This document shows positions 15,326-37,582 of a stretch of DNA of 64,000 nucleotides, one piece after another (the stretch's first letter is position 1; each line of letters starts with the position of its first letter). Made by a program: the position numbers and the translations under genes. The notes beneath the pieces are model-generated. The model was given only the letters and a program-made list of their open reading frames with translations. It had not been told where the DNA came from and ran no database searches. The stretch spans positions 309,486 through 373,485 of the IMG/VR virus record IMGVR_UViG_3300042558_004148. One strand, written 5' to 3'.

Positions 15326-15985
15326 ATGCAAAGTTGTGAAAATTGTGGGAATGTACATAATGGTGAATTGGGTAGCGGGAGATTTTGCTCTCTAAAATGC
15401 TCTAGAGGATTTAGTACTAAATCTAAAAGATCGGAAATAAATTATAAGGTTTCGAAAACATTGACAGGAAAGGGAAACCCGCCAGAAATAAAAGAATGTG
15501 GCCACTGTAAAAATAAATTTGAAATTTCTTGGTCAAAACGTCTACAGACATGTTGTTCAAGAAAATGCGCCGCACAATTAAAATGGCTGGATGATGATTA
15601 TAGAAAAAATATAACGGAAGCTTCTTCAAAATCAGCTTATGAAAAACACAAAAATCCAGACATTAAGTTCGGGTGGAGAACAAGGTCAAAATTTGAGATG
15701 TCATATCCTGAAAGTATAGCAAAATCAATTCTTGATGAATATGGCATACAATATGAATATGAATATCCATTTCATCCATATTTTATAGATTTTGCAATCG
15801 TTGATCATAAAATTGCTATCGAGATAGACGGAAGACAGCATAATCAAAACGAGAGAATGTTAATAGATATTAAAAAAGATAAAAAATTGATGGAGAATGG
15901 ATGGAGAATATTTAGAATAAAGTTTCCAGAGGATAATATTAAAAATAGCATTAAAAATATATTGGCAGATATACCCTCCGCCTGA
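15326..15985 (+). CDS. free-standing endonuclease: Zn-finger modules plus DUF559/Vsr-like PD-(D/E)xK domain
   Basis: CENC...FCSLKC; CGHC...CCSRKC; YFIDFAIVDHKIAIEIDGRQH...DKKLMENGWRIFRI; GATATATA at 15301. Confidence 0.85.
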   Translation: MQSCENCGNVHNGELGSGRFCSLKCSRGFSTKSKRSEINYKVSKTLTGKGNPPEIKECGHCKNKFEISWSKRLQTCCSRKCAAQLKWLDDDYRKNITEASSKSAYEKHKNPDIKFGWRTRSKFEMSYPESIAKSILDEYGIQYEYEYPFHPYFIDFAIVDHKIAIEIDGRQHNQNERMLIDIKKDKKLMENGWRIFRIKFPEDNIKNSIKNILADIPSA

Positions 15986-16040
15986 TACGCGGTAGAAAGG
16001 TTAACTGGTTATATGTGGGTTCGAATCCCATTCTGCCAAC
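15962..16040 (+). ncRNA. tRNA-like RNA without a canonical D arm (GAT anticodon-like loop)
   Basis: TTGGCAGA/TCTGCCAA acceptor; GTGGG-TTCGAAT-CCCAT T arm; CCGC-CTGATAC-GCGG. Confidence 0.65.
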
Positions 16041-18721: not shown

Positions 18722-18847
18722 GGGTAACCTTCCGGGGTGGGAACCGGAGCCAACGCGTAATTTTGGCGTCATCCATGACTAAGGTTAATAAGGAAACAGC
18801 AAGACTCGAGTAATTGCAAATCCAGGGTTCGATTCCCCTGTTACCCA
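18722..18847 (+). ncRNA. 126-nt tRNA-like RNA with a multibranched interior
   Basis: GGGTAA/TTACCC-A acceptor; CAGGG-TTCGATTC-CCCTG; TTCCGG-GGTGGGAA-CCGGAG hairpin. Confidence 0.6.
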
Positions 18848-20360: not shown

Positions 20361-20709
20361 GGGGTTGGTTATGGATAGTCAGGAGACGATTCCATAACCA
20401 TTTGATTGAAGGTGGTAATGTTTTATATAAAATCTTATCGATGATAGTTATAAACTAATTTAAGTGTTTCTACGGAAACAGATAAAACAGCAACCGCTTC
20501 CTTTACAAAAACAAAAAAAACTGAGATAGAACTCAATTGTTAAACAAGTTACTGAAATCTCATAGAGAAAGAGGAATCTTTACCACTAGACAGATAATTG
20601 GTTAGCAAAAAGAGACTTGGTTTTTGACTTTGCCTTTGTAGTAAAGGAAGGTCTTTGACGTTGGCATTGTCGTTAGCATAGTCTATACACTTTATCATTT
20701 TCATAACCC
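20361..20709 (+). ncRNA. putative ~350-nt structured RNA or 3' UTR element
   Basis: GGTTATGGA/TCCATAACC; CTTCCTTTAC (20497)/GTAAAGGAAG (20641); TGTTTC-TACG-GAAACA. Confidence 0.4.
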
Positions 20710-20715
20710 ATAATA

Positions 20716-20787
20716 TTACCAGTTGGCGTATTGGCATACGCACCCGATCGTAAGGGAGATATTAGGTTCGATTCCTATGCTGGTAGC
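20716..20787 (+). ncRNA. tRNA-like/pseudo-tRNA with an irregular anticodon arm
   Basis: TTACCAG/CTGGTAG; GCGTA-TTGGCA-TACGC; TAGG-TTCGATT-CCTA; CCC-GATCGTAA-GGG. Confidence 0.55.
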
Positions 20788-20792
20788 AAATA

Positions 20793-20972
20793 GAGTTTGT
20801 CGGTCCGTGATGATGATTAATTCTTTTATGGATGCAGTAGGAGTAAACGTGTTGTTGGCGTAAACCACATTGCTATAAACCACATTAGTAGACCTGTAGA
20901 TGGTGATAATTAATTATCCCGTAGGGTTATAATAATAAATCAATCCATAGTGAATACAGCGTCGGCAAGCTC
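20793..20972 (+). ncRNA. putative 180-nt structured RNA
   Basis: GAGTTTGTCG/CGGCAAGCTC closing helix; TATGGAT/ATCCATA inner helix. Confidence 0.45.
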
Positions 20973-20979
20973 CATTTAT

Positions 20980-21094
20980 GTTACTGTAGCTTAGCGGAAG
21001 AGCAGTCTCCCTGTAACCGTGCGTAGGGTTCGATTCCCTTTCAGATTGGATGCGAGACGTGGGATTGGCATAGGTTCGAATCCTATCAGTAACT
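20980..21094 (+). ncRNA. tRNA-like RNA with a 44-nt anticodon loop that contains a second T-arm motif
   Basis: Perfect acceptor GTTACTG/CAGTAAC, anticodon stem GTCTC/GAGAC and T arm ATAGG-TTCGAAT-CCTAT; inner AGGG-TTCGATT-CCCT. Confidence 0.7.
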
Positions 21095-21099
21095 CAAAA

Positions 21100-21298
21100 G
21101 TGTTGTTAGCTCAATTTGGTCAGAGCTTCCGATGGGTAGATATTAAGAAGATTCTAGACACTATCTTAAAAAGGGCCACAGGGACACGGAGTGCTAGGTG
21201 ATATGCGTAATGAAATTAATTACTTCATGTAACAGGTCATAGGGTCCGTAAACGGTACATAAGGCCGTTGGGTATAGGTTCGAATCCTGTACAACACA
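21100..21298 (+). ncRNA. 199-nt tRNA-like RNA with large internal expansions
   Basis: GTGTTGT/ACAACAC-A; D arm GCTC-AATTTGGTCA-GAGC; ATAGG-TTCGAAT-CCTGT. Confidence 0.7.
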
Positions 21299-21415
21299 CG
21301 ATGTGGCGTTGACCTGTCTGCTGCCACAATGGATAAGAGGAATAGCTTTTAGGAAGTAGATCCAATTTGATGCGCAAAAAAGTGGAGGGTGACGAACGGG
21401 GAGAGACTCGTCCAT

Positions 21416-21487
21416 AGTTCCATAGTTTAACGGATAGAATTTCCCACTACGGATGGGAAGATGAGGGTTCGAATCCTTCTGGGACTA
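21416..21487 (+). tRNA. tRNA-Arg(ACG)
   Basis: TCCCA-CTACGGA-TGGGA. Confidence 0.9.
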
Positions 21488-21525
21488 CTAATTATCGAAT
21501 AATATTTAGAAAATAATAGAAAATA

Positions 21526-21728: not shown

Positions 21729-21760
21729 AAAAGGTCTCCTCTAAAAAGGAGACCTTTTTT
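21729..21760 (+). terminator. terminator/attenuator hairpin before the tRNA-Ser array
   Basis: AAAAGGTCTCCT-CTAAAA-AGGAGACCTTTT plus TT. Confidence 0.85.
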
Positions 21761-21982: not shown

Positions 21983-22055
21983 TCCTCCGTGGCTCAATTG
22001 GTAGAGCAGCTGATTTGTAATCAGCAGGTTGCAGGTTCGATCCCTGTCGGAGGAT
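21983..22055 (+). tRNA. tRNA-Thr(TGT)
   Basis: GCTGA-TTTGTAA-TCAGC. Confidence 0.93.
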
Positions 22056-22070
22056 CTAATAAATAAAAAT

Positions 22071-24356: not shown

Positions 24357-24457
24357 GGTCCGGTGGTGAAGTTGGTAAACACTAAGGTGGATGTATTCGA
24401 AGGCCAAGAATAACTAACATCTACTAGGCGTCGCAGGTTCGAATCCTGCCCGGTCCA
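24357..24457 (+). ncRNA. 101-nt tRNA-like RNA with an elongated anticodon arm
   Basis: GGTCCGG/CCGGTCC-A; GTG-AAGTTGGTAAA-CAC; GTGGATGT/ACATCTAC; GCAGG-TTCGAAT-CCTGC. Confidence 0.7.
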
Positions 24458-24507
24458 CAAATCTCAAGATTAATTACCTTGAGGCTGTCAGGTTCGAAAC
24501 TGACGAT

Positions 24508-29266: not shown

Positions 29267-30850
29267 ATGTATGCTAAAACCATATCAACATTATTTCTTA
29301 TTCTCGCATTCAATGTAATTGGATATGGGCAAACATTCACGTATTCTTATACCGATCCATGTACAGGGTCAATAAAATCTCTACAGGTTCCTTCCAATGG
29401 GATCACAGTTAATTATTACGGAGAAATCCAAACATTCCAGCCAATAGATTTTTATAATGGCGGATTTGAAACATGGACACAAAATGTTTATTCCAATTAT
29501 GGGGGGAACAATCCATGCGCAACTATAGTTGGCTTATCGTCAACAGTTAATATTGCACAGAACACCGCTATAAATTTTATAGGTATAGTTAATTCATTAT
29601 CTGCACTTAGCGATATGGCTGCTACTGCAGGATCAACTAATATATTATCCGGCGTGGGGAGTGTACAGAATTCATCAAATGGTGGGAACAATAAAGGTAA
29701 GAATAAACAAACAGGATCTGGAGGAACAACAGGATCTGGTGGTTCTCAAAATCAGGGAGGTAATAATGGAAACAACAGCAGCAATAACGGAAATAGTAAT
29801 GCTAACGGTAGTAATAATACCGGGGGCTCTACAGCTACTAACGGGTCTACGCAATCTAATGACCAAACAACAGGATCTGGAGGAACAACAGGATCTGGAG
29901 GAACAACAGGATCTGGAGGAACAACAGGATCTGGAGGAACAACAGGATCTGGAGGAACAACAGGATCTGGAGGAACAACAGGATCAGGTCAGACAGGCAC
30001 TTCAAGCGGATCAAGTGGATCTACTGGTCAGAATAGCAGCAATACTAATGGGAGCGGGGGTTCCACAGAAGGAGGCAATGGAAAAAGCGAATCTACTACT
30101 ACCACAGAAACCCCTACAGAAAGCGAAGGAAAAACGAATATAGTTGGTGGATCTGTTGCTTCAGTACAAAATTCAACAAACAGCGGTGGCTCACCGTCTA
30201 ATAAAAATGGAAACAGACCAACGATATTAGCCAGTAGTGATTTTGTTGGATTCAATTTCAAGGATTCGGATGTAACCGCAGGTGGTAAAGTAACGGGAGG
30301 TTATACCTCGATGAGATGGGATGGTGCAAGATCATGGGGAATTAATGCAGATTATACAACAGCTATAAAAGGGCCAAACATAACAGGATTCTATGCTTTC
30401 ATTAAAAAGAAAAGAATAGATCTTATATCAGGTACAGTAACATTAGGATTCGATAGAAGATCATCATTGTATGGTACATTAGCTCTTGGTCAAATGTGGA
30501 ATATAGGCAAACGTGGTAAATTTAAAGCAGTTTATATGCTAACTGGATCTTACGGTAATGTATATGGTGAGGAATTTGTAGGTACTGCAGCAATAGCTGG
30601 TACCATGTATGATTTTAAAGTTTCAAAGAGAATAGACATTAAACTTCTGGGATTATATGTTTATGCTCCTTATGTTAGTTATTATAACGATATACTATTA
30701 AAATCACCGCACGTGGTTTTACCTATAGTTGGTACTAATGTAAGTTTAAGTAAGAGATTTAAACTTAACGTAAACTGTGGAGGTGCATGGGCTCTTAATG
30801 AGAATGCACTTAATTATACCATAATGCTAGGAACAAGAATGTTATTATGA
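29267..30850 (+). CDS. exported protein with a Gly/Ser/Thr/Asn linker and a predicted beta-barrel C-terminus
   Basis: Signal peptide; GSGGTT repeats; alternating hydrophobic strands ending YTIMLGTRMLL. Confidence 0.7.
   Translation: MYAKTISTLFLILAFNVIGYGQTFTYSYTDPCTGSIKSLQVPSNGITVNYYGEIQTFQPIDFYNGGFETWTQNVYSNYGGNNPCATIVGLSSTVNIAQNTAINFIGIVNSLSALSDMAATAGSTNILSGVGSVQNSSNGGNNKGKNKQTGSGGTTGSGGSQNQGGNNGNNSSNNGNSNANGSNNTGGSTATNGSTQSNDQTTGSGGTTGSGGTTGSGGTTGSGGTTGSGGTTGSGGTTGSGQTGTSSGSSGSTGQNSSNTNGSGGSTEGGNGKSESTTTTETPTESEGKTNIVGGSVASVQNSTNSGGSPSNKNGNRPTILASSDFVGFNFKDSDVTAGGKVTGGYTSMRWDGARSWGINADYTTAIKGPNITGFYAFIKKKRIDLISGTVTLGFDRRSSLYGTLALGQMWNIGKRGKFKAVYMLTGSYGNVYGEEFVGTAAIAGTMYDFKVSKRIDIKLLGLYVYAPYVSYYNDILLKSPHVVLPIVGTNVSLSKRFKLNVNCGGAWALNENALNYTIMLGTRMLL
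29870..29977 (+). repeat. 6 x 18-nt perfect tandem repeat ACAGGATCTGGAGGAACA (TGSGGT)
   Basis: Read directly; a further copy near 29710. Confidence 0.95.
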
Positions 30851-32520
30851 GAAAGTTTATAACCAGTCTAATCGTAATTCTGATAACATGTGCTACTTAT
30901 GCGCAAACGTTTTCCTATTCGGGATACATCTATAACGCGAATGGTACAGGAGCAGTAAATGTTCCAGTAAAGCTATATAAAAGAACAACCCCAACTTTAA
31001 CCGGATTTACCTCACAAACTAATTACAATGGTCACTCATATTATCGTTCAACAGGTTCTATGACATGGACTGCTGCTAAAACTGCTTGTGAAAATATGGG
31101 TGGACATCTTGCTACAGTTTCAAATGCAGCTGAGAATAATTTTCTCTTTAATACATGGCCATCAGGTTGGATTGGATATTATCAAGATAAAGTTGCTGGA
31201 TATACTTATTCTGAACCTTTAGGTGGATATCGATGGACAGAAACTCAAGTAACTGCAAATAGAGTAGCAGATTATGACGTTTCATCATATTCTTCAGGTT
31301 CGACCCTAGTTGATATCAAAGGAGGATTTAATGCTACTTTATACAATTCACCGACATATACAAGTACTGGTGGTAAGTATCTAAGCTTCAATGGAGCTAA
31401 TCAATATGCAATAACCGGAAACTTGGCTTCGGCAATGGGAAATACCAATCACATCACTTTGTTTGCTTGGGTTTATCCTACAGGGAATGGCGTTATTGTT
31501 AACGAACTAGGAACTGGAAGTCCTACATCCGGTTGGCATGAATCTGTTATAGAAATTACTGGAGGAAACACATTGAGAGTTGGATTTTGGACAGGAATTG
31601 GAATTCAACAATTAAGTACTACTATTACACTTAATGCTTGGCATTTAGTAGCAATAACTTATAATGGAACAACCATGAAAGGTTATTTAGATAATGTTAA
31701 TTTCGGATCTGTTAATTTTCAGAGAGAAGCTGCACATTTATATTCAGGAAATGGAGAATTTTTTGGAATAGGATTGACTGAAACTACTAATATGGGAAGT
31801 GGTGCTTATGGATCTTTTAGATTAGGAGATTTTCAAGTTTTTAATAGAGCTTTAACTGCCGATGAATTAGATAGAACATACAATTTATATGCATATAGAT
31901 ACAAGCTAAATCAATATGTTAATTGGAATGGCGGAGAACCTAATAACTCAGGAAATGAAGATTACGCTCAATTCGTAGGTAATGGACAATGGAATGATCT
32001 ACCGAACACTACTCTCCCTTATGTAATTGAATTTGATTATATCAACGATTTTACTCCTTGGGCTTTATATCAAACGGTCTATACAAATTCTAATGGATAT
32101 TATTCTTTTAGTCAATCAACGAATCCTGCAACTGAATGGTATATAAAAGTTGATGCACCTACTCCAATTACTACTCACCAAACATCAGATTTAAGTTCAA
32201 TAGGCAATATTGTAATTGGAACAACCACAAGAAAATCTATACATTGGAATATGTTTGACGTAAACAATGATGGCAAAATTACAATATCCGATTCATATTA
32301 TGTTTGGGGAAAGAAAAACGGGATATTTCCTAGCTGGATTGGATCTCAACCATCCTCACTTTATACTGTTTCCCAATTTAACTCATTGAATTCAGGAACA
32401 GTAAATTTAAAATCAATCTACCCCGGAGTAAGTTCATTTACGATATCCACCCCGGTCAGTGGGGGGTCTACAAATTATTATCTAATCGCTCCTGGATTTT
32501 CGGGACAGGTAACATATTAA
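30847..32520 (+). CDS. secreted C-type lectin with an inserted LamG domain and a C-terminal dockerin-like motif
   Basis: GHSYYRS...TWTAAKTACENMGGHLATV; WNGGEPNNSGNEDY...GQWNDL; LGDFQVFNRALT; DVNNDGKITISDS. Confidence 0.85.
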   Translation: MRKFITSLIVILITCATYAQTFSYSGYIYNANGTGAVNVPVKLYKRTTPTLTGFTSQTNYNGHSYYRSTGSMTWTAAKTACENMGGHLATVSNAAENNFLFNTWPSGWIGYYQDKVAGYTYSEPLGGYRWTETQVTANRVADYDVSSYSSGSTLVDIKGGFNATLYNSPTYTSTGGKYLSFNGANQYAITGNLASAMGNTNHITLFAWVYPTGNGVIVNELGTGSPTSGWHESVIEITGGNTLRVGFWTGIGIQQLSTTITLNAWHLVAITYNGTTMKGYLDNVNFGSVNFQREAAHLYSGNGEFFGIGLTETTNMGSGAYGSFRLGDFQVFNRALTADELDRTYNLYAYRYKLNQYVNWNGGEPNNSGNEDYAQFVGNGQWNDLPNTTLPYVIEFDYINDFTPWALYQTVYTNSNGYYSFSQSTNPATEWYIKVDAPTPITTHQTSDLSSIGNIVIGTTTRKSIHWNMFDVNNDGKITISDSYYVWGKKNGIFPSWIGSQPSSLYTVSQFNSLNSGTVNLKSIYPGVSSFTISTPVSGGSTNYYLIAPGFSGQVTY

Positions 32521-32542
32521 ATAAAAAATAAAATACTAACTA

Positions 32543-32998
32543 ATGAGAAATTTATTATTTTTACTACTTCTGATGCCAGTTATGGCATTTACACAAACAG
32601 AAATATGTGTTAAGATTGATTCGGTTTATTCTACTGCTAAATTAAGGGAGATGGGAAATAGAGATATCAGATTTGGTATCCAACAAATAGCTGAGGATAT
32701 ATTATCCGAAAAATATTGTCTTTCAGAAAAAGGAAATCCTATGGAAATAGAGGTTTATTATTTCGGTATACCTAAAAAATCATTAAGGATAGCAGGCATG
32801 GAAAAAACCAATCAAATAACACAGGTTGGTATTAGAATATATTACAATGGGATTAAATACGAGGGTCTGGGTGAATCAGATACCGAGGTTAGAGCAGTAA
32901 TGATAGAACTGGTTGATGGACAAGTACCATTCTCTAAGATGACAGTATCGAATGCTATAAAAAAAGCAATAATAGATGCTGTAAACAAGATAGAATAA
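32543..32998 (+). CDS. exported protein, distant paralog of the CsgG-like ORF at 28547
   Basis: RFGIQQIAEDIL vs GLGVTNIVLEYL; EGLGES vs GSGLGEA; FSKMTVSNAIKKAI vs FNQSTIGTTTKKSL. Confidence 0.6.
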   Translation: MRNLLFLLLLMPVMAFTQTEICVKIDSVYSTAKLREMGNRDIRFGIQQIAEDILSEKYCLSEKGNPMEIEVYYFGIPKKSLRIAGMEKTNQITQVGIRIYYNGIKYEGLGESDTEVRAVMIELVDGQVPFSKMTVSNAIKKAIIDAVNKIE

Positions 32999-33033
32999 TA
33001 AAGATATATACAGAAAGAAAATAAAGAACCGAA

Positions 33034-33708
33034 ATGGCTTATCGAATAATATTAAGAAGAGACACCACTCAAAATTGGGAATCTAATAATCCCGTATTAC
33101 TTTCGGGCGAACCTGGGTATGAAACGGACACTGGAATACTAAGAGTCGGTGATGGACTAACAACTTGGAAGGATCTAAATCCATATTATGGTGTTACAGG
33201 ACCGATTGGTGTTACAGGTTCCACTGGAGCTACTGGAGCAATGGGAGTTACTGGAGCTACTGGACCTTCAGGAGGACCGGTTGGAGCTACTGGACCGGTT
33301 GGAGCTACTGGAGCAATAGGAGCTACTGGAGCAATAGGAGCTACTGGAGCAATAGGAGCTACTGGAGAAGTTGGAGCTACTGGAGCAATAGGAGCTACTG
33401 GAGCAATAGGAGCTACTGGAGCAATAGGAGCTACTGGAGCAATAGGAGCTACTGGAGCAATAGGAGCTACTGGAGCAATAGGAGCTACTGGAGCAATAGG
33501 AGCTACTGGAGCAATAGGAGCTACTGGAGAAGTTGGAGCTACTGGAGAAGTTGGAGCTACTGGAGCAATAGGAGCTACTGGAGCAATAGGAGCTACTGGA
33601 GCATCTATAGAATTTTCTTCTACTCAACCTGGCAATACTGCTTCGCCCTCCACATGGGGAGAAATAACGATAGGAGCTACAGCATATTACATACCTCTGT
33701 ATTTATAA
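33034..33708 (+). CDS. Mtd_N/hyaluronidase-N-like domain plus a collagen-like (GATGAI)n fibre
   Basis: [38 protein letters not shown]; GATATATA at 33003. Confidence 0.85.
33301..33603 (+). repeat. about 16 x 18-nt repeat GGAGCTACTGGAGCAATA (variant ...GAAGTT)
   Basis: Read directly. Confidence 0.95.
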
Positions 33709-33724
33709 TATAATTAGAAACCAG

Positions 33725-33753
33725 AAAAACCCGATATTATATGTCGGGTTTTT
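33725..33753 (+). terminator. intrinsic terminator
   Basis: AAAAACCCGATAT-TAT-ATGTCGGGTTTTT. Confidence 0.8.
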
Positions 33754-33821
33754 CGTGTTTCTAATTTAAGTATATGTTAATATGGATATATACTTAATCA
33801 TAAATAAAATACATCAAAAAG

Positions 33822-35381
33822 ATGCCTTATAGAATATTACTTAGAAGAGATAACGCATTAAGCTGGGCATATAATGACCCGGTTTTAATGACAGGTGAAC
33901 CTGGATACGAAACAGATACCAATAAATTTAAAATCGGAGACGGACAGGCACCTTGGTCGCAATTGCCATATTATTCTGGAGTAACTGGAGGTACCGGTCC
34001 GATCGGACCCATTGGTATAACAGGAGCTACGGGTGCTAATGGATCTAGCGGTACCTCAGGTAGTTCTGGTACTAGCGGTACTAGCGGTACTAACGGTACT
34101 TCCGGAGTGAATGGTGCTGGATTAAGTTCTAAATCTGGAACCGTTTCATCTGGTGATACCGGATGGGTTGGTCCTGTCTATGATGTTGTCTTCGCTCAGT
34201 CATTCGGGTCTACAAATTATTCCATTTCTGTTGATGTTACAAATAGTGGTCCAATAACAATAACAAATAAGACCTCTTCCGGGTTTAGAGTTGCGACGGG
34301 GATGTTTGCCGAGAATTTTGATTGGATTGCGATTGCTAATGGTGAAAGTGTGGTACCAAGTTCAAGTGGCACATCAGGTTCAAGCGGTACCTCAGGTTCA
34401 AGCGGTACATCAGGTTCATCGGGAACTGCTGGTACTAGTGGTACTTCAGGAACTAATGGATCTTCAGGTACTGATGGATCATCTGGAACTAATGGATCAT
34501 CGGGAACTAATGGTACCTCAGGCACAGACGGAACTTCAGGAACATCTGGTACTAGTGGAAGTAGTGGAACATCAGGAAGCAGTGGAAGCAGTGGAACTAA
34601 TGGAAGCAGTGGAACTAATGGAAGTAGCGGGGTTTCACCTGGATATAATCCAATCCCATATAAATACGAAAATGCAGGGGATGTAACTATAAACAGTGAC
34701 GGGACGGATCCATTAAATACCGGAAGAATGATAGGGTCCGGTATTACATATACTCCATCCAGTATAGGAACTATTGGCATCTCATTTTCATTTGGTGTAA
34801 ATATCACATCAGATTTTGTACCTCTTGATAATTATGCATTCTCTATACGATATGGGACTGGAACACCTCCAATAACTAGTGATCAATTAACAGGAACACC
34901 GATAGCTACCCAAATATACGAAACATTCAATGGACAGTCCGCAGTAACTAATATGTATATAAATTCGGTACTTACCGGATTAACTATAGGTACAGATTAC
35001 TGGTTTGATTTATCAGTAACTTCAACAGAACAGAATCCACCAACAGCAAGATTCAATGGTTCGAATATAACATGTAGTATATTGGAATTAAGTGGTGGAA
35101 TTGGAGCAACTGGTCCTATTGGTGGATCAGGTACCGGAGCAAATATATATTACGGTGACCAAACAATAACATCAGGAAATAAGGTAATTGTAAATACCAT
35201 AGAGGTATATTCAGGCAATATATTAACACTTAATTCACCTATAGTGGATGTACCAGCAATATTTAAAATCTCCGATTATTCAGCTCTTAACTTTACTGAT
35301 GATATAGGTGCCTCCGCAGGTGGTGTACCAACAGGAGGTATCTATCATAATGCTGGAGCAGTAAGGATAAGATTAACTTAA
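33822..35381 (+). CDS. Mtd_N-like fibre protein with GTSGSS repeats
   Basis: [30 protein letters not shown]; GATATATA at 33785. Confidence 0.85.
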   Translation: MPYRILLRRDNALSWAYNDPVLMTGEPGYETDTNKFKIGDGQAPWSQLPYYSGVTGGTGPIGPIGITGATGANGSSGTSGSSGTSGTSGTNGTSGVNGAGLSSKSGTVSSGDTGWVGPVYDVVFAQSFGSTNYSISVDVTNSGPITITNKTSSGFRVATGMFAENFDWIAIANGESVVPSSSGTSGSSGTSGSSGTSGSSGTAGTSGTSGTNGSSGTDGSSGTNGSSGTNGTSGTDGTSGTSGTSGSSGTSGSSGSSGTNGSSGTNGSSGVSPGYNPIPYKYENAGDVTINSDGTDPLNTGRMIGSGITYTPSSIGTIGISFSFGVNITSDFVPLDNYAFSIRYGTGTPPITSDQLTGTPIATQIYETFNGQSAVTNMYINSVLTGLTIGTDYWFDLSVTSTEQNPPTARFNGSNITCSILELSGGIGATGPIGGSGTGANIYYGDQTITSGNKVIVNTIEVYSGNILTLNSPIVDVPAIFKISDYSALNFTDDIGASAGGVPTGGIYHNAGAVRIRLT

Positions 35382-35515: not shown

Positions 35516-37582
35516 ATGAATTACAACGAAAACGAGGATGATGATTTAGCATCAGCATACAAATCAAAGAAGGGGGTAAAAACTCCCATATTAGATTCTT
35601 ATTCTAGAGACTTAACAGAGATGGCGATTAGAGGTGAATTAGATCCAATAATCGGTAGAGACGAAGAAATAGAGAGAGTTTCACAGATCCTCTCCAGGAG
35701 AAAGAAAAATAATCCAGTTTTAATTGGAGAACCCGGTGTTGGTAAATCAGCAATTGCCGAAGGATTAGCATTAAAAATAGTACAAAGGAAGGTTTCAAGA
35801 AGTCTACTCAATAAAAGGGTACTTACTTTGGATTTAGGTTCAATGGTGGCAGGAACCAAATATAGAGGCCAATTTGAGGAAAGAGTAAAGGGGATACTAG
35901 AGGAGCTCAGAAACAATAAGGATATAATAATCTTCATAGATGAAATTCATACCATGGTCGGAGCTGGCGGTGCATCGGGTTCATTGGATGCTTCCAATAT
36001 GTTTAAGCCACCATTAGCTAGAGGCGAGATACAATGCATCGGGGCAACCACGCTGAATGAATATAGACAGAACATAGAAAAGGATGGTGCACTAGAAAGA
36101 AGATTTCAGAAAGTTATTGTAAATCCTCCAGATGCAGAAACTACCATAGAGATACTAGAAAACATAAAAAGTAAATATGAGGATTATCATAATGTAAAAT
36201 ATACGGATGAAGCCATATTAAATTGTGTGAAACTTACTGAAAGATATATTACTGATCGAAATTTTCCCGATAAGGCATTAGATGCACTTGATGAAGCAGG
36301 AAGTAGAACACAGCTTAGCGATGTTAAAATTCCAGACAGCATAACTAATTTGGAAACCAGCCTTATTAAAGTAACTGAGGAAAAAGATAAATCTGTAAAA
36401 AAGCAAGATTATGAGGGTGCTGCTAAATACAGAGATCAGGAAAGAAAAATTAGATTATCTCTGGATCTTGAAATAAAGTCATGGGAAGAAAAACTTAAGG
36501 CGAAAAGAAAAGTTGTTGATGGTGAAAGAGTAGCGGAAGTAGTTTCGATGATGTCAGGGGTTCCTCTTAAGAAAGTTTCAGAGGTTGAAAACGAAAGGCT
36601 CTACAGGATGAATGATGAATTACGTGGAAAAGTAATAGGTCAAGATCATGCTATAGAAAAAATTGCTAGGGCTATCCTTAGAAATAGAATGGGACTGAAA
36701 GATCCAAATAAACCAATAGGATCATTTATGCTATTAGGACCTACCGGAGTTGGTAAAACCCAATTGGCGAAAGAATTATCTAAATATATGTTTGGAGATA
36801 CTGACTCATTAATAAGAGTTGATATGAGTGAATATATGGAAAAATTTGACGTATCTAAATTAACGGGAGCTCCTCCAGGATACGTTGGACACGAAGACGG
36901 AGGACAATTAACCGAGAAAATAAGAAGAAAACCATATTCAATAGTACTTTTTGATGAAATTGAAAAGGCACACCCCGAGATATTTAATACACTACTCCAG
37001 ATACTGGATGAAGGTCATATCACAGATAGTATGGGGAGAAAAATAAACTTCAAGAATACGTTAATCATATTGACCTCTAATATAGGCCAAAGAAAATTGC
37101 AAGAATTTGGTGGCGGTGTCGGGTTTTCAACAGCAACAAAGGAAAACTATGCTGAAATGGAAAATGAAATGTTTCTTAGAAAAGAACTTGAGAAGAAGTT
37201 TTCCCCTGAATTTATAAATAGATTGGATGATATAGTTTATTTTAAAACATTAGAAAAGAAAGATCTACTTCAAATACTTGATGTTGAATTGGATAAGGTT
37301 ATTCCTAGATTAGAATCACTAGGATTTAAAGTTAAAATAGCTGATGATCTTAAAGATAAAATATGTGAAGCTGGATATAATCCAAAATTTGGTGCTAGAC
37401 CATTAAAAAGAATAGTACAGAAATATATTGAGGATACATTAGCTGATCTGATGGTACAAAATAAAATACCACAGGAAAGCACAGTTACATTATCATATGA
37501 CAAAGAGAAAGATGGTGGTATACAGAATCCAGTAAAATTTAAGATACTACAGAAAAGGAAAAGAAAAGATGATATGGCATAG
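35516..37582 (+). CDS. clpC: ClpC-like AAA+ chaperone lacking the N-terminal Clp_N domain
   Basis: GEPGVGKS and GPTGVGKT Walker A motifs; UVR-like KQDYEGAAKYRDQE; GGVGF loop; FGARPLKR. Confidence 0.92.
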   Translation: MNYNENEDDDLASAYKSKKGVKTPILDSYSRDLTEMAIRGELDPIIGRDEEIERVSQILSRRKKNNPVLIGEPGVGKSAIAEGLALKIVQRKVSRSLLNKRVLTLDLGSMVAGTKYRGQFEERVKGILEELRNNKDIIIFIDEIHTMVGAGGASGSLDASNMFKPPLARGEIQCIGATTLNEYRQNIEKDGALERRFQKVIVNPPDAETTIEILENIKSKYEDYHNVKYTDEAILNCVKLTERYITDRNFPDKALDALDEAGSRTQLSDVKIPDSITNLETSLIKVTEEKDKSVKKQDYEGAAKYRDQERKIRLSLDLEIKSWEEKLKAKRKVVDGERVAEVVSMMSGVPLKKVSEVENERLYRMNDELRGKVIGQDHAIEKIARAILRNRMGLKDPNKPIGSFMLLGPTGVGKTQLAKELSKYMFGDTDSLIRVDMSEYMEKFDVSKLTGAPPGYVGHEDGGQLTEKIRRKPYSIVLFDEIEKAHPEIFNTLLQILDEGHITDSMGRKINFKNTLIILTSNIGQRKLQEFGGGVGFSTATKENYAEMENEMFLRKELEKKFSPEFINRLDDIVYFKTLEKKDLLQILDVELDKVIPRLESLGFKVKIADDLKDKICEAGYNPKFGARPLKRIVQKYIEDTLADLMVQNKIPQESTVTLSYDKEKDGGIQNPVKFKILQKRKRKDDMA

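What the first reader, a model, noticed from the sequence alone, without database searches (positions are those of the whole stretch)
20980..21094. tRNA inside a tRNA: 44-nt anticodon loop containing a second T arm
The acceptor (7/7), anticodon stem (5/5) and T arm (5/5) are perfect. The loop reads CCTGTAA followed by a 37-nt insert containing AGGG-TTCGATT-CCCT. Removing the insert would leave a 7-nt loop CC-TGT-AA. It could be an intron-like precursor or a double-elbow tRNA mimic.
Basis: seen in the sequence. Interest (0 to 1): 0.7.

Follow-up and report, generated by a model that had tools for sequence, protein, structure and literature searches.

The report
Phage tRNA-shaped gene with conserved insert
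A huge freshwater phage carries a gene for a tRNA-shaped RNA whose anticodon loop holds a 44-base, almost unchanging hairpin; similar "enigmatic tRNA introns" were reported in Lak megaphages, and nobody yet knows how they work.

Summary
The feature is real. Window 20980-21094 (+) matches the Rfam tRNA model end to end (47.4 bits), with about 50 extra bases in the anticodon loop. It lies in a 32-tRNA array of a complete 373-kb phage.

I found three diverged homologues: one in a 362-kb phage and two on metagenome contigs. All carry the same insert.
- The cloverleaf is kept by compensatory changes: 8 pairs changed on both sides, and 100% of cells are paired.
- The insert is nearly invariant: 2 of 48 columns vary, against 23 of 63 in the tRNA body.

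The conserved anticodon stem is GUCUC/GGGAU (21005-21009 with 21061-21065), not GUCUC/GAGAC. The loop is therefore 51 nt and the insert 44 nt. The inner "tRNA" is only a 7-bp stem plus a T-arm-like hairpin.

It is neither a group I intron nor an archaeal-type (BHB) intron, and the phage has no EndA or RtcB. No simple excision gives U33.

The closest precedent is the Lak megaphages' "enigmatic", highly conserved tRNA introns, which include a tRNA-Thr(TGT) with a tRNA-like intron.

My best guess (0.4) is an unspliced RNA in which the tRNA body acts as a scaffold for the hairpin. The main rival (0.3) is a protein-spliced intron. I rate it a new member of a known but unexplained kind.

The parts
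20980..21094 (+). Whole gene: tRNA-shaped RNA, 114 nt plus discriminator U at 21094, no encoded CCA
   Evidence: Rfam RF00005 47.4 bits over the full model; ARAGORN -i; conserved in L024, L023 and L022
20980..20986 (+). Acceptor stem, 5' strand; pairs with 21087-21093
   Evidence: 7/7 pairs in all four homologues; 4 pairs changed on both sides
20989..21003 (+). D arm (GCUU-AGCGGAA-GAGC) with G18 G19
   Evidence: Invariant stem; only the loop varies (AGCGGAA/AUUGGAA)
21005..21009 (+). Anticodon stem, 5' strand (GUCUC)
   Evidence: Covaries with 21061-21065: 2 pairs changed on both sides, 100% paired
21010..21016 (+). First 7 nt of the 51-nt loop (CCUGUAA), resembling a Thr anticodon loop but with C, or G in L022, where U33 should be. 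Columns 32-33 are the only freely varying part of the loop.
   Evidence: Alignment A1; CCU becomes CGA in L022; a variant CCUUGA appears in a run X15 contig
21016..21059 (+). 44-nt insert if placed at the canonical 37/38 position, as ARAGORN places it in homologue L024
   Evidence: L024: tRNA-Thr(tgt), intron 44 at 37; 2 of 48 columns vary across the four lineages
21013..21019 (+). Inner stem, 5' strand (GUAACCG); pairs with 21047-21053 (UGGAUGC) with a central A.A mismatch
   Evidence: MFE and suboptimal folds of all four loops; RNAalifold. Invariant, so there is no covariation test.
21025..21039 (+). Inner T-arm-like hairpin AGGG-UUCGAUU-CCCU (loop UUCGACU in L022 and L023)
21054..21060 (+). 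Invariant 3' tail of the loop (GAGACGU).
   Evidence: Invariant in all homologues, but cannot pair with CUCCC in L024
21061..21065 (+). True anticodon stem, 3' strand (GGGAU)
   Evidence: (Rfam alignment)
21070..21086 (+). Outer T arm AUAGG-UUCGAAU-CCUAU
   Evidence: 5/5 pairs; 2 pairs changed on both sides
21087..21093 (+). Acceptor stem, 3' strand

Best explanation
This is a functional phage gene for a tRNA-shaped RNA that most likely works without being spliced. The tRNA body acts as a scaffold. Its acceptor, D, anticodon-stem and T arms are kept by compensatory mutation, and all the usual tertiary-contact bases are present. The body gives the L-shaped fold. By inference it also gives 5'/3' end processing by RNase P and RNase Z, CCA addition (the phage has its own CCA-type nucleotidyltransferase), and stability. 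Grafted onto the anticodon stem is the part that matters: an almost invariant 44-48-nt rod made of a 7-bp stem with an A.A mismatch, a purine-rich internal loop, and a 4-bp stem capped by a consensus T-loop. It cannot decode, because there is no 7-nt loop and no U33. I infer that the rod is a sequence-specific ligand or decoy. Its target would be a host or phage factor that normally handles tRNA T arms or anticodon arms, such as a tRNA-processing or tRNA-modifying enzyme, or a tRNA-targeting defence nuclease. Shown: the structure, the covariation, the extreme conservation of the insert, and the absence of known splicing signals and enzymes. Inferred: the processing route, the lack of splicing, and the target.
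For: Cloverleaf: 100% of 124 cells are paired and 8 of 31 pairs changed on both sides; 0 of 500 shuffles reach this. RNAalifold finds the same fold independently. Only 2 of 48 insert columns vary against 23 of 63 body columns (Fisher p 3e-5). By comparison, ordinary tRNAs of the two complete phages are about 70% identical, and their ClpB-like protein is 51-59% identical. Variation lies right next to the insert (columns 26-33 and 85-90). This argues for selection on the insert rather than recent transfer with co-conversion of the flanks. No excision of the 51-nt loop can give U at position 33, which is C or G. The body is no closer to the phages' real tRNA-Thr genes than to other tRNAs, and it lacks their shared C2-G71 pair. 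There is no group I or other Rfam hit, no EndA and no RtcB. Metatranscriptome run X25 holds 10 of 10 sampled words of the unspliced 126-nt stretch, yet it was not among the holders of the surrounding 3 kb. This suggests that an insert-bearing RNA accumulates. The same genome holds at least six more tRNA-like genes with other inserts. Among them is a family that shares one Leu-like scaffold but carries different inserts.
Against: No target or partner was found: no conserved neighbouring protein gene, no antisense site in the genome and no Ro60. The insert sits exactly where tRNA introns sit, and the first 7 loop bases look like a Thr anticodon loop. In Lak phages the analogous insertion interrupts an otherwise perfect tRNA-Thr, which fits an intron better. 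The phage has an Rnl1-like ligase next to a metallophosphoesterase, which could seal exons. The inner helices are invariant, so their pairing is predicted, not proven.
Confidence: 0.4

Rival explanations
1. It is a true intron in a phage tRNA gene. A protein endonuclease, from phage or host and not yet known, cuts out the 44 nt. The halves are held together by the tRNA body and sealed by the phage's heal-and-seal enzymes (the Rnl1-like ligase with its adjacent metallophosphoesterase, or the Rnl2-like ligase) or by host RtcB. The result is a 71-72-nt tRNA that reads ACN (Thr) codons. The conserved hairpin would be the recognition element for the endonuclease.
For: In L024 ARAGORN places the insert at the canonical 37/38 position and restores a 72-nt class I tRNA with a 4-nt variable loop. 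G35, U36 and A37 are invariant. The phage encodes Rnl1-like and Rnl2-like ligases, a metallophosphoesterase and a CCA-type enzyme. In Lak phages, insert-free alleles of tRNA-Thr(UGU) show that the insertion precisely interrupts a perfect CUUGUAA loop, and that its 3' end coincides with the discriminator of the inner tRNA-like unit, a possible RNase Z site (PMC6784885).
Against: Position 33 would be C or G, never U. The phage already has a normal tRNA-Thr(UGU) at 21983-22056. The body lacks the C2-G71 pair shared by the phages' real Thr tRNAs. There is no BHB motif, EndA or RtcB in the phage. Protein-spliced introns are normally less conserved than their exons, whereas here the insert is far more conserved. 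No spliced joint appeared in the RNA-library contigs. Rnl1 is absent from Lak-A1 and only weakly matched in G001.
Confidence: 0.3
2. It is a scar of recombination in a repeat-rich tRNA array, namely a partial tandem duplication of the 3' half of a tRNA. The product would be a dead or dying tRNA gene with no function of its own.
For: Columns 38-69 have the order and spacing of tRNA positions 39-72: 5 nt, a short variable stretch, a T arm, then 7 nt. A weak BLAST match aligns columns 7-61 with an ordinary phage tRNA-Arg (E 0.3, not significant). Other phage tRNA arrays hold many odd chimeras with extra T arms.
Against: Four lineages, whose ordinary tRNAs are only about 70% identical, keep the insert at 96-100% identity and repair every stem by compensatory change. 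A pseudogene would not do that.
Confidence: 0.07
3. It is a selfish mobile insertion that spreads between co-infecting phages at the DNA level, as introns with trans-acting homing endonucleases do. It would be identical everywhere because it arrived recently, not because it is useful.
For: Lak phages show presence/absence polymorphism of identical insertions (PMC6784885). A DUF559-type endonuclease ORF sits in this tRNA array at 15326-15985.
Against: The insert occurs in one gene family only. Three pattern scans for it in IMG/VR and one in 185,579 prokaryote genomes found no other context. No insert-free allele was found. The exon bases directly flanking the insert differ between lineages, whereas recent homing would have co-converted them.
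Confidence: 0.1

Closest known systems
'Enigmatic', highly conserved tRNA introns of Lak megaphages (Devoto et al., Nat Microbiol 2019, PMC6784885; preprint 10.1101/356790), in particular the tRNA-Thr(TGT) whose intron 'may encode a tRNA'
   Same: Both are oversized tRNA genes in the tRNA array of a huge phage, whose host is a Bacteroidota (shown for Lak, only suspected here). In both, the insertion lies in the anticodon loop of a gene read as Thr(TGT), has tRNA-like features, and is conserved to near identity between phages. Neither is a group I intron, and no mechanism is known for either. I confirmed the nested architecture in Lak-A1 (MK250016.1).
   Different: There is no sequence similarity. 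The Lak insertion is 114 nt: a 31-nt leader plus a full cloverleaf-like unit, placed between U36 and A37 of a perfect CUUGUAA loop, and insert-free alleles exist. Here the insertion is 44 nt with only a stem and a T arm. The loop has no U33, no insert-free allele was found, and the habitat is fresh water.
Archaeal and eukaryal protein-spliced tRNA introns (BHB motif, EndA/Sen endonuclease, RtcB or Trl1 ligase)
   Same: Short insert, compatible with the canonical 37/38 position, and the tRNA body is intact.
   Different: No bulge-helix-bulge motif. The consensus fold has one 3-nt strand on the 5' side and a 7-nt strand on the 3' side. The phage has no EndA or RtcB. The insert is more conserved than the exons.
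Bacterial group I introns in tRNA anticodon loops (tRNA-Leu UAA, fMet, Ile, Arg)
   Same: An insertion in the anticodon loop of a bacterial-type tRNA gene.
   Different: At 44 nt it is far below a group I core, and there is no Rfam group I hit even at E<=1.
tRNA-like stable RNAs of phage tRNA clusters (T4 species 1 and 2 RNAs), and the engineered 'tRNA scaffold' in which the anticodon arm is replaced by a cargo RNA. Both are recalled from my own knowledge and were not tested here.
   Same: An RNA with tRNA-type ends and arms, encoded among phage tRNAs, that is not a decoder. The tRNA body would serve for processing and stability, with the anticodon end carrying something else.
   Different: The function of the T4 RNAs is also unknown, and the scaffold is a laboratory design, not a described natural class.

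Membership tests
tRNA (Rfam RF00005) | Four-arm cloverleaf that scores above the gathering threshold | tested here: met
   47.4 bits against a threshold of 29, model positions 1-71; all stems 100% paired across four homologues
tRNA (Rfam RF00005) | Conserved tertiary-contact bases (U8, A14, G18 G19, T54 Psi55 C56, A58) | tested here: met
   Read from alignment A1: T8, A14, the GG of the D loop and TTCGA of the T loop are invariant
tRNA (Rfam RF00005) | 7-nt anticodon loop with U33, able to decode | tested here: not met
   The loop is 51 nt. Position 33 is C (three lineages) or G (L022), and no first-k plus last-(7-k) excision gives U33.
Lak-type phage tRNA with conserved 'enigmatic' intron | Oversized tRNA gene in a huge-phage tRNA array, with the insertion in the anticodon loop | tested here: met
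   373-kb phage with terminal repeats; 32-tRNA array
Lak-type phage tRNA with conserved 'enigmatic' intron | Insertion sequence near-identical between phage genomes | tested here: met
   46-48 of 48 positions identical between four lineages
Lak-type phage tRNA with conserved 'enigmatic' intron | Insertion itself tRNA-like | tested here: inconclusive
   Only a 7-bp stem and a T-arm-like hairpin are present. The Lak-A1 insertions have fuller inner cloverleaves.
Lak-type phage tRNA with conserved 'enigmatic' intron | Insert-free alleles exist, showing a precise insertion | tested here: not met
   No insert-free allele in IMG/VR or the JGI metagenome contigs using 5'-half patterns. This contrasts with Lak-C1 and Lak-B2.
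Lak-type phage tRNA with conserved 'enigmatic' intron | Sequence homology to the Lak insertions | tested here: not met
   blastn at E<=10 against 50,697 phage records, which include the 15 Lak genomes, gave only T-arm matches
Archaeal/eukaryal BHB intron | Bulge-helix-bulge: two 3-nt bulges separated by a 4-bp helix | tested here: not met
   Consensus and suboptimal folds
Archaeal/eukaryal BHB intron | Splicing endonuclease (EndA, PF01974) and RtcB (PF01139) available | tested here: not met
   Neither is present in the complete phage genome, while the control genomes matched. The host genome is unknown; the Bacteroides thetaiotaomicron control matched RtcB.
Group I intron | Catalytic core (P3-P9) recognised by the Rfam model, with a length of about 200 nt or more | tested here: not met
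   44 nt; no hit at E<=1 in 20600-21500
tmRNA | tRNA-like domain without D and anticodon arms, plus a tag reading frame | tested here: not met
   ARAGORN found no tmRNA; the D arm and anticodon stem are intact
YrlA / bacterial Y RNA | Rfam RF02553 match and a Ro60 (TROVE) partner | tested here: not met
   19.4 bits against a threshold of 69, and the match spans two neighbouring genes; no TROVE domain in the phage

The most novel reading that the evidence does not exclude
Huge phages have a protein-dependent tRNA splicing pathway of their own, the first bacterial tRNA splicing that is not by group I introns. In it, the invariant T-loop-capped hairpin is the handle for an unknown endonuclease, or for RNase P/RNase Z acting on the inner tRNA-like unit, and a phage RNA ligase reseals the anticodon loop. 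The equally new alternative is that phages naturally use tRNA bodies as chassis to express and stabilise small effector RNAs.
Probability: 0.3. Interest if true: 0.85.

Novelty: new member of a known kind. Interest (0 to 1): 0.55.

Why it matters
Short, non-self-splicing insertions in bacterial-type tRNA genes have no known mechanism. The Lak report called them enigmatic and gave no comparative test. This case adds three things: proof by covariation that the interrupted tRNA body is under selection; evidence that the insert is the most conserved RNA segment of the whole tRNA array; and a correction of where the insert really sits. It also shows that the phenomenon extends to freshwater phages, and that one genome can hold a whole set of tRNA-like genes with different inserts. 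If the RNA is spliced, it points to a new RNA-processing pathway in bacteria or phages. If it is not, it points to a natural tRNA-scaffold class of phage small RNAs, possibly aimed at host tRNA enzymes or tRNA-cutting defences. Either way it is directly testable with a 115-nt transcript.

Tried and rejected
rejected by covariation.
- **Group I, ribozyme or other known RNA family:** no Rfam hit at E<=1. The YrlA and plastid hits are far below threshold.
- **BHB intron:** no motif and no EndA.
- **Split tRNA:** I searched the genome for a 5' half that could pair with the inner 3'-half-like segment. Nothing tRNA-like turned up.
- **Antisense target:** the only genomic match is a 13-nt complementary site, which is about the chance expectation and includes a variable base.
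- **Conserved protein neighbour as partner:** none is shared between lineages.
- **Ro60/Y-RNA system:** no TROVE domain.
- **Link between an Rnl1 ligase and insert-bearing tRNAs:** not consistent. Rnl1 is absent from Lak-A1 and weak in G001.
- **RNase P/RNase Z excision of the inner unit:** this would leave a 9-nt loop here. It fits the 3' junction of the Lak-A1 Thr insertion but not its 5' junction, so I kept it only as a speculative variant.
- **Resemblance to 16S rRNA helix 45:** the insert shares GUAACCGU and UUGGAU with the 16S sequence as I recall it. I dropped this because an 8-mer match is expected by chance, the pairing register differs, and the rRNA sequence came from memory.
- **Spliced joint in RNA libraries:** none was seen, but only assembled contigs were available, and few of them cover the gene.
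- **Homologues of the neighbouring insert-bearing genes (21100-21299 and 24357-24458):** none in the fetched relatives.
- **GenBank phages:** no homologue.
- **Prokaryote genomes:** no copy of the insert.

Full report
**Setting.** The window is the last 64 kb of a complete 373,485-bp IMG/VR phage genome with direct terminal repeats and 34.9% G+C. DNA of this phage occurs in many lake-water metagenomes. One window protein carries a type IX secretion sorting domain, which hints at a Bacteroidota host but does not prove it. Window 9.2-25.6 kb is a tRNA array: ARAGORN finds 32 tRNAs and Rfam finds 34 matches to its tRNA model.

**The observation.** The Rfam tRNA model matches it from model position 1 to 71 at 47.4 bits (E 5e-7 for the window), with about 50 extra bases in the anticodon loop. 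With introns allowed, ARAGORN calls tRNA-Thr(tgt) with a 37-nt intron. The minimum-free-energy fold keeps the cloverleaf and turns the extra bases into a hairpin capped by UUCGAUU. The energy z-score is unremarkable at -0.7, so folding energy alone proves nothing.

**Relatives.**
- Exact-pattern scans found identical copies in four IMG/VR contigs of the same phage species.
- Contigs of another strain in run X15 gave the sequence of a diverged 5' half.
- Patterns built from that 5' half and from the insert found three distinct homologues: L024:5401-5516(-) in a complete 362-kb phage (G001), and L023:252-367(-) and L022:8189-8304(-) on metagenome contigs.
- G001 is a distant relative. Its ClpB-like protein is 51-59% identical to the window's, and ordinary tRNAs with the same anticodon are about 70% identical at the median.
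- No insert-free allele was found. There is no copy of the insert in any other gene (IMG/VR), none in GenBank phages, and none in 185,579 prokaryote genomes.

**Structure by comparison.** On the four-sequence alignment A1, the cloverleaf plus the predicted inner helices are 100% paired in 124 cells.
- Eight pairs change on both sides: four in the acceptor stem, two in the anticodon stem and two in the T stem.
- No shuffle out of 500 reaches these values, and partners slid by 1-3 columns fall to about 50% paired.
- The anticodon stem that covaries is columns 26-30 with 82-86. This is GUCUC/GGGAU in the window, GCCUC/GGGGU in L022 and L023, and CUCCC/GGGAG in L024.
It pairs in only 80% of cells and shows no compensation.
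- RNAalifold reaches the same structure on its own, and it is also the Rfam alignment.

The loop is therefore 51 nt (21010-21060) and the variable loop is a normal 4 nt. In L024, ARAGORN places a 44-nt insert at the canonical 37/38 position of a 72-nt tRNA.

**The insert.** Inside the loop, all four sequences fold the same way:
- three free bases;
- a 7-bp stem (21013-21019 with 21047-21053) with a central A.A mismatch;
- an internal loop of 5 and 7 nt, in which a C-G pair flanked by two G/A oppositions is possible;
- a 4-bp stem closed by a consensus T-loop (21025-21039);
- a free, invariant GAGACGU tail.

These helices are invariant, so covariation cannot test them. Only 2 of 48 insert columns vary: one T-loop base and one internal-loop base. 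In the tRNA body 23 of 63 columns vary (Fisher p 3e-5). Variation reappears immediately outside the insert, in columns 26-33 and 85-90. Recent lateral transfer with co-conversion of the flanks is therefore unlikely, and the invariance reflects selection on the sequence itself.

**What it is not.**
- It is not a group I intron or any other Rfam family.
- It has no bulge-helix-bulge motif.
- The phage has no EndA and no RtcB, and no Ro60.
- It is not a tmRNA.
- It cannot be a decaying pseudogene, given the compensatory changes.
- It is poorly suited to decoding. Position 33 is C or G in every lineage, and no simple excision of the loop creates U33.
- The body is no closer to the phages' genuine tRNA-Thr genes than to other tRNAs, and it lacks their C2-G71 pair.
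- A normal tRNA-Thr(UGU) lies 900 bp downstream.
- Because G35 and U36 are fixed and every NGU anticodon reads Thr, the 'Thr' label carries no weight.

**Expression.** A strong terminator-like hairpin at 21729-21758 follows the next ordinary tRNA. The gene probably lies in one transcription unit with its neighbours, but that is an inference. RNA-library contigs show no spliced joint, though few of them cover the gene. Metatranscriptome run X25 holds all 10 sampled words of the 126-nt stretch and run X27 holds 6 of 10. X25 was not among the holders of the surrounding 3 kb, for which a twentieth of the words was required. This suggests that the insert-bearing RNA accumulates as RNA.

**Precedent.** Devoto et al. 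[quoted passage not shown] These include a tRNA-Thr(TGT) whose intron 'may encode a tRNA', is identical across cohorts, and is absent from some genomes. I examined Lak-A1 (MK250016.1). It has several oversized tRNA genes, two of them with nested tRNA-like units.

Aligning Lak-A1 with Lak-C1 and Lak-B2 shows a 114-nt insertion exactly between U36 and A37 of a perfect CUUGUAA loop. By my reading, the insertion is a 31-nt leader plus a cloverleaf-like unit, and its discriminator base is the last base of the insertion. RNase Z could therefore create the 3' exon end there. The 5' end has no such explanation.

The window's gene is the same kind of object but is unrelated in sequence and much reduced. 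It has no U33 and no known insert-free allele.

**The wider pattern in this genome.** Allowing introns, ARAGORN finds seven insert-bearing tRNA-like genes. These include the immediate neighbour at 21100-21299, one at 24357-24458, and a family at genome 258.5-259.7 kb and 303.7 kb. That family shares one Leu-like scaffold but carries different inserts. Other large phages also have tRNA-like genes with extra T arms. This modular look, the same chassis with different cargo, is one reason I lean towards the scaffold reading.

**Mechanism.** I commit, at 0.4, to an unspliced RNA. In this reading the tRNA body provides fold, end-processing and stability, and the invariant T-loop-capped rod is a sequence-specific ligand or decoy. 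Its target would be a factor that handles tRNA arms.

The main rival, at 0.3, is a new protein-dependent splicing route. The phage has the sealing side of such a route: an Rnl1-like ligase directly followed by a metallophosphoesterase, an Rnl2-like ligase, and a CCA-type nucleotidyltransferase. However, no endonuclease is known, and Rnl1 is not shared by all phages with such genes.

A selfish mobile insertion (0.1) and a recombination scar (0.07) fit the data poorly.

**Verdict.** This is a real, conserved and probably functional gene. I class it as a new member of a known but unexplained kind.

Noticed in passing
window 21100-21299 (+): Five bases after the finding lies a second tRNA-shaped gene. 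It has acceptor GTGTTGT/ACAACAC, a normal D arm and T arm, and an insert of roughly 106-120 nt where the anticodon arm should be. A metatranscriptome contig (run X19) covers 21153-21349 with one difference. No homologue turned up in the fetched relatives.
   Followed up: partly
window 24357-24458 (+): Third oversized tRNA-like gene (Rfam tRNA 37.9 bits). Its anticodon arm is a 9-bp stem carrying a further small hairpin instead of a 7-nt loop.
   Followed up: partly
window 20717-20787 (+) and upstream 20470-20710; L017:11100-11300: tRNA-like gene with an abnormal anticodon loop (ARAGORN 'tRNA-???'). It is conserved, together with about 200 nt of upstream non-coding sequence, in a relative that has no tRNA array at this place (67.7% identity over 198 nt). 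The upstream part is matched with no differences by short contigs of metatranscriptome run X17.
   Followed up: partly
G000 258474-259699 and 303655-303753 (outside the window): Four or five tRNA-Leu-like genes share nearly the same acceptor, D arm and T arm (AGTCAGG...CCTGACT) but carry different inserts, the three ARAGORN delimits being 46-183 nt, in the anticodon region. It looks like one scaffold carrying different cargo.
   Followed up: partly
window about 18722-18847 (+); G000 about 158120-158225: Two elements have a T arm followed by an acceptor-type 3' strand (the window one has GGGTAAC...GTTACCC-A). Neither has a D arm, and both share the string AGCAAGACT. They are tmRNA-like or minimal tRNA-like, and neither ARAGORN nor Rfam calls them.
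   Followed up: no
G001 (loci L025-L028): The 362-kb relative has several tRNAs of normally short types that are 85-89 nt long with an extra arm in the variable region (Pro, Asp, Val, Ile, His, Met). It also has a tRNA with anticodon CTA, a possible amber suppressor, and a 132-nt gene that ARAGORN reads as anticodon TTA with an insert.
   Followed up: no
L022, L023 and L024, just downstream of the homologues: About 250 nt of non-coding sequence after the homologous gene is conserved between the three other lineages. It includes a hairpin with an invariant loop TGTCGACA and a covarying stem. It is absent from the window.
   Followed up: no
Lak-A1 MK250016.1 (L032 c14332-14518) compared with Lak-C1 and Lak-B2: The Lak tRNA-Thr insertion is 114 nt, placed exactly between U36 and A37. 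Its last base is the discriminator of the inner tRNA-like unit, so the 3' junction coincides with a potential RNase Z site. The 5' junction lies 31 nt upstream of the inner unit.
   Followed up: yes
window 15326-15985 (+): An ORF with a DUF559 / Vsr-like endonuclease domain sits inside the tRNA array. Its end overlaps a weak Rfam tRNA match at 15963-16039. It may be a homing-type nuclease.
   Followed up: no
window 30847-35381 (+): Two proteins stand out here: one with C-type lectin and concanavalin-like domains, and one with an Mtd N-terminal domain and collagen repeats. These are the kind of target proteins seen with diversity-generating retroelements. I did not look for a reverse transcriptase.
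   Followed up: no
G000 199.9-203.4 kb, 209.4-213 kb and 218.3-218.7 kb (outside the window): RNA repair and tRNA maturation genes: an Rnl1-like ligase directly followed by a calcineurin-like phosphoesterase, an Rnl2-like ligase with an OB-fold domain, and a CCA-adding-type nucleotidyltransferase.
   Followed up: partly
G001 234791-239560: The ClpB-like ATPase of the relative matches the window's protein (35516-37582) in two pieces about 2.8 kb apart. This suggests an inserted element, or an intein or intron, in that gene.
   Followed up: no
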